From Octopus bimaculoides (lineage: Eukaryota), in assembly GCF_001194135.2 (NCBI RefSeq), contig NC_068990.1:39856921-39894853 (forward strand): a stretch of 37,933 nucleotides of DNA, read 5' to 3'. Both the position numbers and the translations under genes were made by a program. Positions 13,483-23,889 of this stretch are shown piece after piece. How positions within the stretch are numbered: the stretch's first letter is position 1; each line of letters opens with the position of its first letter. The notes beneath the pieces were generated by a model. That model ran no database searches, was not told where the DNA came from, and worked only from the letters and a program-made list of their open reading frames with translations.

Positions 13483-13896
13483 CTTTAAAATCGAGATGAT
13501 ATAAAAGTTAAAATAATGGAGACCTATGTCACAAATCTTAAAACTTAAGACAATGTAAAATGCATGTGACAAGTTTCAAAACATGAGACAATGTAGAATG
13601 CATGCAGCACATCTTGAAACTTATGACAGTAAGAAGCTATATAAATCACAAAACTTAAGACAATAACCATGATTACAAGATACTACACATAATCTAGTTC
13701 AACATACATAGACACAACTTATATTCATACATTGAAGGCACAATATATTTTAACATATTTATAAATAAATTACAAAGATGGATTACTCATGTATTTCCTA
13801 ACTGGATATTTCATTGTCACAGCATTACATATTTTAACACTAAGTTACCAACAACTAGAAGCAGTTGTCAAATCTTCCTATTGAGACACACATATA

Positions 13897-14219
13897 TCAT
13901 CATCATCATCATCATCGTTTAACGTCCGCTTTCTATGCTAGCATGGGTTGGACGATTTGACTGAGGACTGGTGAAACCGGATGGCAACACCAGGCTCCAG
14001 TCTGATTTGGCAGAGTTTCTACAGCTGGATGCCCTTCCTAACGCCAACCACTCAGAGAGTGTAGTGGGTGCTTTTACGTGTCACCCGCACGAAAACGGCC
14101 ATGCTCGAAATGGTGTCTTTTATGTGCCACCCGCACAAGCCAGTCCAGGGGCACTGGCAACGATCTCGCTCGAAAATCCTACAGGAGCCAGTCAGGCGGT
14201 ACTGGCAACGGCCACGCTC
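13897..14219 (-). mobile_element. Young family C (RTE-like) 3' tail with internal ggcactggcaacg repeats, truncated by gap
   Basis: (GAT)n tail on -; 5 mismatches in about 170 nt against the 27992-28180 copy. Confidence 0.9.
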
Positions 14220-15080: not shown

Positions 15081-15563
15081 TCAGGTTGAGTAAAAAGTAA
15101 GCAACGTTTTGAAACAGGAAATTCATCACAATATATTTCAACAATGCGGAAGTTTTATTCATCAAAGTAAGTGCCATTGCAATCAACACATTTTTGCCAA
15201 CAAGTTTGTTTATTCTGGTAACTTAAAAATCTGGAGTTCTGGAGGAGATGGACTCTTTGAATGCACTTTCAGCATTGGTTTGATTTTTGAACTCCTTCTC
15301 TTGCAGGAAACCATCAAGGTGCTTGAAAAAGTGGTAGTCAGCAGGAGAAAGGCCTGGGGAATAAGCTGAGTGGGGAAGAACCTCGTAGCCAAGTTCCCTC
15401 AACTTCTGAAACATCATTAATGAAATGTGTGGTCAAGCATTGTCATGAAGAATGATTGGCCCTCTTCTTTTGTCCAGTGTGGGATGGAGGAGGAGTAGTT
15501 TTTCATTCATTTTGGCAATTTCATGGCAATATGTTTCTGCAGTGATGGTTTTTCCAAGTTTTA
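15081..15563 (-). mobile_element. 5'-truncated mariner (Tc1/mariner DD34D) transposon remnant
   Basis: Reads LKLGKTITAETYCHEIAKMNEKL...GPIILHDNA*PHISLMMFQKLRELGYEVLPHSAYSPGLSPADYHFFKHL (HDNARPH and YSPDLAPxD motifs). TIR-like end tcaggttgagtaaaaagtaagcaacgtttt sits next to (TA)n. Confidence 0.9.
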
Positions 15564-15869
15564 ACACAGTAATTCAGCAGATTATTTATCATGCCTTTAA
15601 GCAATCCTTCAGGCTCAAATACACATGGCTGGTCTTATTTAAAAAACTGAGAAAGGATACTGATCTATGAGAAAACATGGGAAAAGGTGGGAGGTGAATG
15701 CAAAAGGTGGAATGAGAAAAGATTGAATGAGAAAACTAAAGGCAAATAAAAAAAAAAGATGAAAGGAAAGAAAACCAAGAGTTGCATCCCTTTTGTCCAT
15801 CAAAATAATAATTAGTATAGCTGATGTAGAATAATTCAACTAGGAGGAGGCCAAAGTCTGTGAGACAGC
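15564..15869 (+). repeat. Left arm of exon-flanking inverted repeat
   Basis: 15599-15686 matches the reverse complement of the right arm at 82/88 nt, including a 30-nt exact run cttcaggctcaaatacacatggctggtctt. Confidence 0.92.
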
Positions 15870-15878
15870 GTACTTAAC

Positions 15879-16016
15879 CCAGAGATGGTATCCACCAGTT
15901 TGACAGTCGTTTTAGGATGTCAAGTTCAACTGCACACCACATACAATCAGGTGGAGCAGCATAGAGGAATCCACACCATATGTAAAATTGATCAAAGAGA
16001 TGTAAACCATGTGCAG
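15879..16016 (-). CDS. Putative coding exon (138 nt, phase 1 to 1): AHGLHLFDQFYIWCGFLYAAPPDCMWCAVELDILKRLSNWWIPSL; product unidentified
   Basis: Acceptor gtaacatttttcag, donor G|gttaag; only one frame is open end to end, with about 31% GC3. An alternative internal donor gtatgt gives a 72-nt phase-0 exon. Confidence 0.55.
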
Positions 16017-16157
16017 CTGAAAAATGTTACATTACTTTTGGATCCAACAGTTCCAACACATTGCTTAATTCCAGACCTGAAATTTTTCACAAATGCAAGC
16101 ACAAGGTCAAATTTCTTTTGTTAAACTGGAGGACATCACTCTCTCCAGTTTAGACAT

Positions 16158-16478
16158 GCTGTCTCATAGAGATTAGTCTCCTTCCCATTAAATTATTCAA
16201 CACCTGCTATACTAATTGTAATTTTGATGGCCAAAGGTGACACAATACTTGGTTTTCTTTCCTTTCATTTTTATTTCATTTTCATTTACCATTTGTTTTT
16301 TTGTTCCACCTTTTTGATTTCTATTTTTTGCATTCCTGTTCCTCTCATCTTTTCCTATGTTTTCTCATAGACCAGCATCCTTTCTCAATTTTTTAAACAA
16401 GACCAGCCATGTGTATTTGAGCCTGAAGAATTGCTTGGAGACATAAGGCATGATATACAATCTACCAAATTGTTGTGT
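16158..16478 (-). repeat. Right arm of exon-flanking inverted repeat
   Basis: Reverse complement aligns to 15564-15869, including atgaaaggaaagaaaaccaag, ccatcaaaat, aattagtatagc and tgagacagc. Confidence 0.92.
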
Positions 16479-16525
16479 CTCCACAGCATGAAACTGTTTT
16501 TAAATACTGTGTGTATTAAATGATG

Positions 16526-18496: not shown

Positions 18497-18533
<37 letters not shown>

Positions 18534-18737
18534 TGTGTCTGTATTTGTTCCCCGCACCCTATTGCTTGACAACCGATGTTGGTATGTTTATAACCCCTTA
18601 ACTTAGCAGTTCGGCAAAAGTGACTGATAGAATAAGTACTAGGCTTACAAAGAATAATCCCTGGTGTCAATGTGTTCGATTAAAGGCGATGCCCCAGCAT
18701 GGTCACAGTCAAATGACTGAAACAAAAGAATAAAAGA
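18490..18737 (+). mobile_element. SINE family B 3' half
   Basis: cttagcagttcggcaaaag...gatagaataagtactaggcttacaaagaataa...ccagcatggtcacagtcaaatgactgaaac plus an (aaagaat)n tail. Confidence 0.85.
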
Positions 18738-18876
18738 ATGTACAGAGCTCTTATGGAAAATTTATCTTTATGTGGGTGTAGCACCCTACATACCAACCTC
18801 TATAGGTGCACACTAAGTATATTTCCATTTAACCAAAAGTGTGTTCATATACACCGCTATACATGCACACACAAGA

Positions 18877-19786
18877 TATTGGGTCACCACACAAATAATG
18901 AGGTTTTTGTATTTCTTTTCTTTTTCAAATCTAAGATTAATATCGTTCTTTTTTTTTCTCTAAAATATACTCTCCTTCATTTTCTACAATGCTCTTCTAT
19001 CTATCTGATAGACTTTGCAAGGCCCCTCTTCCAAAAGTCACTTGTCTGTGATGAAGAATGCTCCTCTAATACTCTTCTAACGTTATCTACAGAATTCATA
19101 TTCTTTCCATCCAAATAATTTTGAAGACTGCGGAATAAAGGATAATCAGTTGAGGCAATGTCCAGCAAATTTGGTGGGTGGGGCATCATTTCCCATTCAA
19201 ACTGCTTCCTCATTTCGAATGTCATCCTTGCTGTATATGGCCAAACATTATCCTGATAGAAGAACACCTTTCATTTCGAAACCAAAGTTGGTTGTCTTCC
19301 TTCTAGCATTGAACTGAATGACTGACTGAATGACCAAATCCAAGCCTTTCTTCTAGTTCCTCAACAGTTACGCAACAGGTTTTGCAGGATGTCCTAGTCG
19401 AGCTCTACAGATCTTCCAAGATGAGGGTAGTCTTCTAGGCTGTAATTTCCGGCTCAGAATTTCTGGAACCATCGTTTACACTGGCTTACACTTATTGTCC
19501 AATTCCCATATTAATATTCCTCATAATTTCCATTGCGTTGTTGCCTTTATTGAACTCATAAAGCAAAATATGCCAAATATGCTCCTTTGTCACTTCCATA
19601 ATAGCTTTGAAAAAATAACTGTTAAAATTGAACTGCACTCTTCAAAACGTGCACTAAGAATAAGTAAATGGTAAACTTACTACCTGATTTTATAGCAAGT
19701 TGATGCACAGAGTTTATCTTGTTTCCCTCAAACTTTTAGTTCATGCAACTGAAAAAAATCTACATTATTTCTGGAATGACTCAATA
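18877..19786 (-). mobile_element. Internally deleted mariner element (about 910 bp) with both TIRs and TA ends
   Basis: N-terminal MEVTKEHIWHILLYEFNKGNNATE (HTH) and C-terminal QDNVWPYTA...PHPPNLLDIASTDYPLFRSLQNYL. TIRs tattgggtcaccacacaaataatg and (rc) tattgagtcattccagaaataatg; the central catalytic region is missing. Confidence 0.88.
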
Positions 19787-23149: not shown

Positions 23150-23889
23150 TTGTGTATATACATATGTATGTACCTAAATATGGATACATATGAATATATA
23201 CATATGTATATTAACACATACCCACGCACACATATATGTGTATATATATGTATATATACGTACATACTTACATACATACACACATACATACATAATTCTT
23301 AACTTTCATTCAAAAATAGGATACATGAAGCTCAGATGAAGAATTAATGAAGATATCAGCTTATTTGATGTACGTGTGTGTGTGTGTGTGCGTGCGCGCA
23401 TATATGCGTGTGTGTGAGTGTGTGTGTGTGTGTGTGTCTGCACATGTGTGTGTGTGTATGGTAGAACATTAAAACATGTATTCAGTTCTCTGTTTCTCAT
23501 TCTTACCCTTTGTGTCATAACATATATTCACACATACTCACATGTATGTTTATGAGTGTACGAGAGTGCTTGATAGTGCATATGCGCGTGTATACTACAT
23601 ATGTGTGTATAAATATTTGCCCAGTTTTTAATTCAAAATTATGCATGATATATGCATATATAAACAAATAAGCTTGCAAAAACAGCTGGGTATAGAAATT
23701 TATACATATATATATTTGTGTGCTTGTTTGTGTGTGTGTGTGTGTGCTTGTTTATGTGTGTGTGCGCGTGTGTGTGTGTATGTGTGTGTAGTTGTTACAA
23801 CTCGTTATTAGTATCACTATATTGAAGTGAAATCGTTATATATACATATATGTACATTCGCACACACACGCACACACATATATGTATGT

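What the first reader, a model, noticed from the sequence alone, without database searches (positions are those of the whole stretch)
15564..16478. ~300-bp inverted repeat that loops out exactly one coding exon
Seen: arms 15564-15869 and 16158-16478 are reverse complements (82/88 in the outer core with a 30-nt exact run; a second conserved block near the inner ends). The 288-nt loop holds the whole 138-nt exon candidate, its acceptor and ~140 nt upstream. The left arm starts about 9 nt into the intron after the donor. I saw no other copy of the arm in this window. Established: flanking intronic inverted repeats promote back-splicing and exon skipping and form ADAR substrates, and coleoid cephalopods edit RNA extensively. 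Inference: this could be a dedicated cis-element controlling splicing, circularisation or editing of this exon, or a foldback/MITE-like element bracketing it.
Basis: partly seen in the sequence, partly recalled or inferred. Interest (0 to 1): 0.8.

Follow-up and report, generated by a model that had tools for sequence, protein, structure and literature searches.

The report
Old foldback repeat beside broken mariner
The ~915-bp inverted repeat is real, but it looks like a decayed transposon-type foldback sitting in repeat debris next to a truncated mariner element, and the "exon" in its loop is no better than about 120 chance open frames in the same window, so this is most likely ordinary junk DNA and not a dedicated splicing or editing switch.

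Summary
The inverted repeat exists and is far beyond chance (blastn E 1e-70). If transcribed it would fold into a ~340-bp imperfect hairpin (-430 kcal/mol, z -20). The geometry differs from the finding. With gaps allowed, the arms are 15564-15905 and 16119-16478, 78% identical, with a 213-nt loop. The last 27 nt of the proposed exon and its donor therefore lie inside the left arm.

The exon is unsupported:
- It has no homologue on either strand in 5.8 billion proteins, Pfam or PDB.
- Its donor (GTTAAG) is weak.
- 122 equally good "AG, open frame, GT" candidates occur in the 32.6 kb of non-N sequence.

The left arm butts exactly against the broken 5' end of an Hsmar1-like mariner relic (15081-15567, minus strand). 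The window is otherwise full of dispersed repeats, microsatellites, a second deleted mariner and two small palindromic MITE-like elements. The arms differ by 55 substitutions (K2P 0.19). Transitions split 19:19 between those that keep G·U pairing on either strand, so there is no sign of selection for pairing.

Best reading: a neutral foldback relic, either a long-TIR non-autonomous transposon or a templated inverted duplication. Copy number, transcription, editing and back-splicing could not be tested. Interest is low.

The parts
15564..15905 (.). Left arm of the inverted repeat (342 nt)
   Evidence: Gapped alignment to 16478-16119 has 284/363 identical columns. blastn gives E 1e-70. The inner 36 nt are significant on their own, with 6/1000 shuffles reaching the score.
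15906..16118 (.). Loop / spacer (213 nt), unique sequence with no recognisable coding content on either strand
   Evidence: The loop has no other copy in the window. The 50-aa minus-strand ORF and the 86-aa plus-strand ORF have no homologue. Neither has a Pfam hit above noise. Mariner HMM and frameshift-aware alignment score at the null level.
16119..16478 (.). Right arm of the inverted repeat (360 nt)
   Evidence: The arm ends at 16478. The flanks beyond it show no further homology: score 12 against a null mean of 12.0.
15591..15694 (.). Best-conserved core of the arms (pairs with 16341-16444), holding the 30-nt exact run
   Evidence: The core is 89% complementary over 104 nt. For 15600-15694, 87 aligned positions match and 8 do not, against 197 and 47 elsewhere, Fisher p 0.014 with a window chosen after the fact.
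15682..15760 (.). A/G-rich low-complexity tract with short tandem sub-repeats inside the left arm. Its diverged, indel-rich counterpart lies at about 16262-16340 in the right arm.
   Evidence: TRF reports 15702-15735, period 15, 2.3 copies. Most gap columns of the arm alignment fall here.
15879..16016 (-). Judged a chance open frame. Its last 27 nt and its donor are part of the left arm.
   Evidence: There is no homologue in 5.8e9 proteins. Pfam gives only an 11-residue hit, E 0.08, no stretch passing on its own. The best PDB match is E 1.4. The donor is GTTAAG and pyrimidines upstream of the AG are 60%. The window holds 122 equivalent candidates.
15081..15567 (-). Context: 5'-truncated Hsmar1-like mariner relic that abuts the left arm. 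It comprises a 3' TIR at 15081-15110 next to TA, and transposase residues ~204-340 at 15567-15158 carrying one stop and one frameshift.
   Evidence: tblastn with full-length mariner transposases reaches E 7e-50. A profile of 8 full-length transposases matches positions 203-328 at 15570-15193, E 3.7e-40. DNA is 68% identical to mariner contig L003 over 15564-15079. No N-terminal half and no ungapped 5' TIR match were found.

Best explanation
The 915-bp structure is an old, neutrally decaying foldback. Most likely it is the relic of a non-autonomous DNA transposon with ~350-bp terminal inverted repeats and a 213-bp internal remnant. It landed in, or was joined to, an Hsmar1-like mariner copy, whose 5' half is now missing.

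I infer that it has no dedicated function. The open frame in its loop is a chance ORF, not an exon. Its only predictable activity is passive. If the locus lies in a transcribed intron or non-coding RNA, the RNA would snap back into a ~340-bp imperfect duplex, which is a generic substrate for ADAR hyper-editing or Dicer.

Shown: the repeat, its limits, its divergence, the mariner junction, the lack of coding signal, and the repeat-rich setting. Inferred: the transposon origin and the neutrality. The broader claim, that this is a repeat-derived neutral structure and not an exon-specific element, I hold at about 0.85. The specific transposon origin I hold at about 0.5.
For: - The repeat has discrete, matching ends on both arms (15564/16478 outer, 15905/16119 inner), with arms much longer than the loop.
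- Homology stops dead at the outer ends.
- The outer left end coincides to within 3-6 nt with the point where mariner homology stops. This holds for the protein profile (15570), tblastn (15564-15567) and DNA against an independent mariner copy that continues at least 39 nt further. That is the behaviour of a discrete inserted unit.
- The arms are 16% substituted (38 transitions, 17 transversions, K2P 0.19) with 24 gap columns. This is similar to the old dispersed repeats of the window, which are 74-84% identical.
- Transitions that would leave G·U pairs are 19 for the minus-strand RNA and 19 for the plus-strand RNA. No strand shows preservation of pairing.
- The arms carry an A/G-rich tract with short tandem sub-repeats, as foldback-type elements often do (my own knowledge).
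- The window is transposon and repeat debris: a second, internally deleted mariner at 18961-19599, two dispersed families with 5 and 6 copies, and two small palindromic MITE-like elements at 30166-30340 and 30553-30662.
- There is no coding signal in the loop or arms, no Rfam family and no tRNA.
Against: - No target-site duplication flanks the 915-bp unit...AAGTTTTA on the left and CTCCACAG... on the right.
- The mariner 5' half expected on the far side of a simple insertion is absent. An extra event, such as an adjacent deletion, has to be assumed.
- Only one copy exists in 32.6 kb of readable sequence, whereas the common repeat families have 5-6 copies.
- Copy number in the genome could not be examined.
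- The termini match no transposon superfamily signature that I recognise.
- The outer core is somewhat better conserved than the rest (p 0.014, post hoc), which strict neutrality does not predict.
Confidence: 0.5

Rival explanations
1. Templated inverted duplication, not a transposon. The break that removed the 5' half of the mariner was repaired with a template switch. That switch copied about 350 nt of nearby sequence (today's right arm) in inverted orientation into the junction. The loop and right arm are the original flank. The structure has decayed neutrally since.
For: One event explains four observations:
- the mariner ends exactly at the arm's outer edge;
- there is no target-site duplication;
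- there is no mariner 5' half or 5' TIR nearby;
- the arm is single-copy in the window.
Internal deletions with filler DNA are common in mariner-type elements (my own knowledge). The neighbouring copy at 18961-19599 is such a deletion derivative.
Against: Templated fill-ins of about 350 nt are much rarer than transposon insertions (my own knowledge). Nothing in the sequence marks microhomology at the switch points. The well-defined, equal ends of both arms and the small palindromic elements elsewhere in the window fit a mobile unit equally well.
Confidence: 0.3
2. One reading: a selected cis-element in which intronic complementary arms bracket a real 138-nt coding exon and control its skipping, circularisation or A-to-I editing.
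For: The RNA would form a very stable hairpin. Reverse-complementary matches in flanking introns are known to promote both back-splicing and exon skipping (PMC8330042, found). [quoted passage not shown] The candidate has an AG acceptor after TTTTTC and a GT donor, and it is open in one frame.
Against: - The exon peptide has no relative in 5.8e9 proteins, Pfam or PDB.
- The opposite strand carries an even longer open frame of 86 codons.
- 122 equivalent candidates exist in the window.
- The donor is GTTAAG.
- The left arm covers the donor and the last 27 nt of the exon, so the arms do not sit in the two flanking introns.
- Pairing-neutral and pairing-breaking transitions are equal on both strands.
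- The 'downstream intron' is a mariner pseudogene on the same strand.
- No host-gene exon was recognised. Pfam found nothing above noise in ten open frames, five in or beside the finding and five elsewhere in the window, and none of the ten window ORFs looked up by exact sequence (the longest ATG/GTG/TTG-initiated part of nine of those frames, plus the mariner ORF 15223-15417) is in the 15-billion-protein collection.
Confidence: 0.06
3. A functional hairpin RNA locus independent of any exon: a long hairpin transcribed on its own or within an intron and processed into small RNAs, or serving as an ADAR sink.
For: The predicted hairpin is long and stable, with a 30-bp perfect run and a 104-bp stretch at 89%. 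The outer core is slightly better conserved than the rest.
Against: Complementarity is only 78% overall, with 24 gap columns. There is no strand bias in wobble-compatible changes. There is no Rfam match in the arms; all sub-threshold hits fall on the flanking microsatellite, apart from a 19-bit one at 16216-16258 and a 22-bit one at 15437-15521. No evidence of transcription is available.
Confidence: 0.05
4. Assembly artefact: a spurious palindrome created while assembling a draft scaffold.
For: The window is a draft scaffold with ten runs of N, one only about 500 bp from the left arm.
Against: Artefactual palindromes have near-identical arms. These differ at 55 substitutions and 24 gap positions. 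The loop and both flanks are unique sequence.
Confidence: 0.02

Closest known systems
Foldback-type / long-TIR non-autonomous DNA transposons (FB-like elements, long-TIR MITEs)
   Same: The arms (342/360 nt) are much longer than the spacer (213 nt). There is no coding capacity. An A/G-rich sub-repeat tract lies inside the arms. The ends are discrete. The setting includes other transposon relics and small palindromic elements.
   Different: No target-site duplication was found. There is no second copy in the window. No superfamily-specific terminal motif was recognised. The family is not identified.
Inverted intronic repeat pairs (e.g. inverted Alu or other reverse-complementary matches) that drive back-splicing, exon skipping and ADAR hyper-editing
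   Same: Two complementary segments within 1 kb would pair in a transcript. Such pairs are usually transposon-derived by-products, which matches the origin proposed here. The mechanism is described in PMC8330042.
   Different: Those cases bracket a real exon, with both arms inside introns. Here the exon is unsupported and one arm overlaps its donor. No transcript evidence is available.
Hsmar1-like mariner elements and their deletion derivatives
   Same: The sequence directly abutting the left arm is a mariner 3' half with a TIR and TA. Deletion derivatives with junction filler are typical of this superfamily (my own knowledge).
   Different: The inverted repeat and loop themselves show no mariner homology at protein-profile, frameshift-aware or DNA level.

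Membership tests
Exon-flanking reverse-complementary intronic repeats (circRNA / exon-skipping elements) | A genuine spliced exon lies between the arms | tested here: not met
   There is no protein, Pfam or PDB relative. The donor GTTAAG is weak. 122 equivalent chance candidates occur in 32.6 kb. RNA evidence is not available.
Exon-flanking reverse-complementary intronic repeats (circRNA / exon-skipping elements) | Both arms lie in the flanking introns, leaving the splice sites free | tested here: not met
   The left arm extends to 15905 and covers the donor and the last 27 nt of the candidate exon.
Exon-flanking reverse-complementary intronic repeats (circRNA / exon-skipping elements) | Back-splice or skipping junction reads | not testable with these tools
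   No RNA-seq access.
ADAR substrate / editing-inducing duplex | A long, mostly paired intramolecular duplex | tested here: met
   -429.6 kcal/mol, z -20.3, stem of about 340 bp with a 30-bp perfect run. This is a generic property of any transcribed inverted repeat.
ADAR substrate / editing-inducing duplex | Transcription and clustered A-to-G mismatches | not testable with these tools
   No RNA data. The genomic substitution pattern shows no strand bias (19 vs 19).
MITE / non-autonomous DNA transposon | Terminal inverted repeats and no coding capacity | tested here: met
   (arms). (no coding signal).
MITE / non-autonomous DNA transposon | Target-site duplication flanking the element | tested here: not met
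   The flanks ...AAGTTTTA and CTCCACAG... share nothing. A direct repeat GTTTTA (plus strand; TAAAAC on the minus strand) at 15558-15563 and 15909-15914 would flank the left arm alone. It is 3 nt out of register and of borderline significance.
MITE / non-autonomous DNA transposon | Multiple dispersed copies in the genome | not testable with these tools
   The arm is single in this window. A 21-mer of the core gave only chance 21-nt matches in bacterial contigs. No eukaryotic genome collection is available.
Foldback (FB-like) elements | Long arms built largely of tandem sub-repeats | tested here: inconclusive
   Only a short tract shows this: period 15, 2.3 copies, plus degenerate A/G-rich repeats. 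Most of the arm is unique sequence.
Mariner (Tc1/mariner superfamily) | Homology of the repeat or loop to mariner transposase or TIR | tested here: not met
   The profile, tblastn, frameshift-aware alignment and DNA comparison all stop at 15564-15570. Only the adjacent 15081-15567 is mariner.

The most novel reading that the evidence does not exclude
The locus lies in an intron or non-coding transcript of a neural gene, and the hairpin is used. Sequestering the donor at 15878 in the stem and recruiting ADAR would make it a lineage-specific switch that decides whether a young, unannotated micro-exon (15879-16016) is skipped, circularised or recoded. This would be a transposon-derived editing/splicing module caught early in its domestication.
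Probability: 0.04. Interest if true: 0.55.

Novelty: new member of a known kind. Interest (0 to 1): 0.14.

Why it matters
It matters little by itself. It is one more decayed foldback in repeat-rich DNA.

It is useful as a caution. In AT-rich, transposon-laden sequence, an open frame with AG and GT at its ends turns up about every 270 bp. An inverted repeat that seems to frame one is then expected by chance.

If the region is transcribed, the hairpin adds to the pool of long double-stranded RNA that editing and small-RNA machineries must handle. The sharp junction with a broken mariner gives a small, datable example of how such foldbacks arise, either by insertion with adjacent deletion or by templated inverted repair.

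Tried and rejected
1. The arms are two head-to-head mariner fragments. I suspected this from by-eye similarities (IIC*ITV, ETVFKYC, EKFQVWN...W, CMWCA). Rejected:
- there is no DNA homology outward of 15564/16478;
- the mariner profile and tblastn stop at 15564-15570;
- frameshift-aware protein-to-DNA alignment scores at the null level.

2. The left arm is a separate insertion into the mariner ORF, with TSD TAAAAC and mariner continuing into the loop. The 16-nt match to the WWSA region of L003 scores 21. However, 2.3% of background windows do as well, and the (TG)n right flank scores 22. This is noise. The TAAAAC repeat remains a weak oddity.

3. The loop ORF is a Tc1/Sleeping-Beauty-like transposase relic.

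4. The exon encodes a DUF4187/G-patch protein. The Pfam hit covers 11 residues at E 0.08, and another of the ten queries scored the same. No G-patch motif occurs anywhere in the window.

5. Search for a mariner 5' TIR. No ungapped match with up to 9 mismatches was found. A gapped, TIR-like sequence at about 19645-19690 belongs more simply to the second, internally deleted mariner.

6. Related copies in public collections. The 21-mer scans gave only chance matches in a bacterial sequence. Exact look-ups of ten window ORFs found nothing. Cluster look-ups gave no organism names.

7. Rfam gave nothing at gathering scores. At the relaxed threshold, only microsatellite-driven hits appeared in the flank, plus two weak ones of about 20 bits.

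Full report
**1. The window**

The window is a draft eukaryotic scaffold. It has ten runs of N totalling 5,315 bases, an AT-rich composition, and about a hundred microsatellite or short tandem arrays. I could not identify the organism.

Yes.
It finds nothing else.
- An ungapped repeat search gives an outer core 15591-15694 / 16341-16444 at 89%. It also gives an inner block 15751-15885 / 16142-16276 at 77%.
- The longest exact run is 30 nt.
- The minus-strand RNA 15550-16500 is predicted to fold into one long hairpin of -429.6 kcal/mol. Dinucleotide shuffles give -218.6 +/- 10.4, so z is -20.3.

**3. The geometry needs correcting**

A gapped local alignment runs from 15905 to 15564 on one side and from 16119 to 16478 on the other. 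Over 363 columns it has:
- 284 identical columns;
- 55 substitutions, of which 38 are transitions and 17 transversions;
- 24 gap columns.

The K2P distance is 0.19. The extra inner 36 nt, tested alone, reach a score that only 6 of 1000 shuffles attain, and they are in register with the rest. The arms are therefore 342 and 360 nt and the loop is 15906-16118, 213 nt.

The last 27 nt of the proposed exon (15879-15905) and its GT donor at 15878 belong to the left arm. The repeat does not loop out exactly one exon. Outward of 15564 and 16478 the two flanks share nothing: score 12 against a null mean of 12.0.

**4. Is the exon real?**

Nothing supports it.
- The 50-codon open frame 15877-16026 (minus) shares no set of 5-residue words with any of 5.8 billion proteins.
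- Pfam returns only an 11-residue hit to DUF4187, E 0.08, with no stretch passing on its own. Another of the ten queries in the same call scored just as well.
- No G-patch motif exists in the window.
- The best PDB match has E 1.4.
- The opposite strand carries a longer open frame, 86 codons at 15864-16121. It too has no relative.
- The donor is GTTAAG, which departs from GTRAGT at +3, +5 and +6. The 15 nt before the AG are 60% pyrimidine.
- Using those same criteria (AG, at least 60% pyrimidines upstream, at least 120 nt open, GT), the window holds 122 candidates in 32.6 kb of readable, non-microsatellite sequence. That is about one per 270 bp.

**5. The surroundings**

Immediately left of the left arm, on the minus strand, lies the 3' half of an Hsmar1-like mariner.
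- The translation reads LKLGKTITAETYCHEIAKMNEKL...YSPGLSPADYHFFKHLD..., with one in-frame stop and one frameshift near the end.
- The closest relatives are mariner transposase fragments carrying Pfam PF01359.
- Full-length mariner transposases recovered by an exhaustive search match residues ~204-340 at 15567-15158, with E down to 7e-50.
- A profile built from eight of them matches positions 203-328 at 15570-15193, E 3.7e-40. It matches nothing else between 15058 and 17918.
- The 3' TIR sits at 15081-15110, next to TA and a (TA)n tract.
- An independent mariner copy on a metagenome contig (L003) aligns at 68% over window 15564-15079. It then continues for at least 39 more nt of transposase ORF that the window lacks.

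The mariner is therefore broken at 15564-15570, which is exactly the outer edge of the left arm. Its 5' half and 5' TIR are not on the other side of the repeat.

Other repeats in the window:
- A second mariner, internally deleted (residues 1-88 joined to 223-341), lies at 18961-19599.
- Two dispersed families have 5 and 6 copies.
- Two small palindromic, MITE-like elements lie at 30166-30340 and 30553-30662.
- There are no tRNA genes and no Rfam families.

**6. Is the repeat itself mariner-derived?**

I suspected so from several by-eye similarities and tested each.
- The profile search of the loop scored below zero bits.
- A frameshift-aware protein-to-DNA alignment of mariner residues ~100-205 against the repeat plus loop, and against the loop alone, scored at the level of shuffles and control windows.
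- A 16-nt match of the loop to the WWSA-coding part of L003 is matched or beaten by 2.3% of background windows and by the (TG)n flank.

All were rejected. A probe for Tc1-type transposase also found nothing in the loop.

**7. Is there a sign of selection for pairing?**

No. A transition in one arm leaves a G·U pair in the transcript of one strand and an A·C mismatch in the other. The 38 transitions split 19 to 19. Overall complementarity is 78% with many indels, similar to the identity of old dispersed repeats in the same window, 74-84%. The outer core is somewhat better conserved: 87 of 95 aligned positions match, against 197 of 244 elsewhere, p 0.014. The window for that test was chosen after seeing the data.

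**8. What it most likely is**

It is a neutral foldback relic. Its discrete, equal ends and its sharp junction with the broken mariner mark it as a unit that arrived at, or was made at, a break. Two origins fit.

(a) A non-autonomous DNA transposon with ~350-bp terminal inverted repeats and a short internal remnant, inserted into the mariner and followed by loss of the sequence on its right side. I prefer this origin, at about 0.5. The reasons are the foldback architecture, the sub-repeat tract in the arms and the presence of other palindromic elements nearby.

(b) A templated inverted fill-in at the break that deleted the mariner's 5' half, at about 0.3. A single event would explain the exact junction, the missing target-site duplication, the missing mariner half and the single copy.

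Against (a): there is no target-site duplication around the 915-bp unit. A direct repeat GTTTTA (plus strand; TAAAAC on the minus strand) at 15558-15563 and 15909-15914 would flank the left arm alone. It is 3 nt out of register and I cannot explain it.

The functional readings are left with small probabilities: about 0.06 for an exon-specific splicing, circularisation or editing element, and about 0.05 for a hairpin-RNA locus. An assembly artefact is excluded in practice by the divergence of the arms.

**9. How it would work, if at all**

Established knowledge says that complementary sequences in a transcript pair, promote back-splicing and skipping when they bracket an exon (PMC8330042), and attract ADAR (PMC9105294). 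Here any such effect would be a passive by-product of transcription through a foldback. With the donor-like GT buried in the stem, the candidate exon would if anything be harder to splice. None of this can be tested without RNA data.

**10. Comparison and verdict**

The closest known things are foldback-type or long-TIR non-autonomous transposons and the inverted repeat pairs of introns. It works like the former in architecture. It would behave like the latter only if transcribed.

Membership of a transposon family is unproven, because the target-site duplication test was not met and copy number is untestable. Membership of the exon-flanking class fails on two tested features: there is no supported exon, and one arm overlaps the splice site.

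Novelty: a new member of a known kind. Interest: low.

Noticed in passing
window 15081-15567 (minus strand): 5'-truncated Hsmar1-like mariner relic. It has a 3' TIR at 15081-15110 next to TA and (TA)n, and transposase residues ~204-340 with one stop and one frameshift. It is 69% identical in protein to a database fragment and 68% in DNA to a metagenome contig.
   Followed up: yes
window 18961-19599, possibly to ~19690 (minus strand): Second mariner relic of a different subfamily, internally deleted (residues 1-88 joined within 22 nt to residues 223-341). A TIR-like end ...ACTTACTACCTGA at about 19690 resembles the 3' TIR of the first relic when gaps are allowed.
   Followed up: partly
window 9506-9692, 13886-14093, 23872-24061, 24821-25018, 27989-28182: Five copies of a ~190-nt dispersed, SINE-like repeat, 74-97% identical. 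The pair 13896-14087 / 27991-28182 is 97% identical, inverted and 13.9 kb apart, so it is a much better-preserved potential RNA duplex than the finding.
   Followed up: no
window 6359-6673, 9849-9997, 18512-18742, 31116-31276, 32684-33178, 33522-33993: Six copies of a second dispersed repeat family, up to ~480 nt and 71-84% identical, in both orientations. Smaller families lie at 4195-4378 / 34467-34640 and at 31646-31803 / 31878-32034 / 35580-35708.
   Followed up: no
window 30166-30340 and 30553-30662: Two small palindromic, MITE-like elements. The first is ~175 nt with ends CATGTGAGAAGGGATGACCACT...AGTGGTCATCCCTTCTCACATG flanked by TA on both sides. The second is a ~110-nt near-perfect hairpin (87%).
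   Followed up: partly
window 15558-15563 and 15909-15914: A direct repeat GTTTTA (TAAAAC on the minus strand) lies just outside the left arm on one side and 3 nt beyond it on the other. It could be a target-site duplication of the left arm alone. It is of borderline significance, and the loop next to it is not recognisably mariner.
   Followed up: partly
L003 (JGI metagenome 3300022689, contig Ga0248655_152796), 666-1322 and 1439-1970: A mariner 3' fragment, 68% identical in DNA to the window's relic, sits about 120 nt from a gene whose product has a Pfam CLP_protease hit (PF00574), on a 2-kb metagenome contig. This is either a chimeric assembly or eukaryotic DNA in the sample.
   Followed up: no
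window 2293-2410, 3478-3800, 8530-8936, 9672-9854, 31515-31588, 32276-32356, 36071-36519: Long trinucleotide arrays (CAT/CAC/TCA/GTG/CTA types) create many spurious long open frames on both strands. Together with the N runs, they dominate any mechanical ORF or repeat listing of this window.
   Followed up: no
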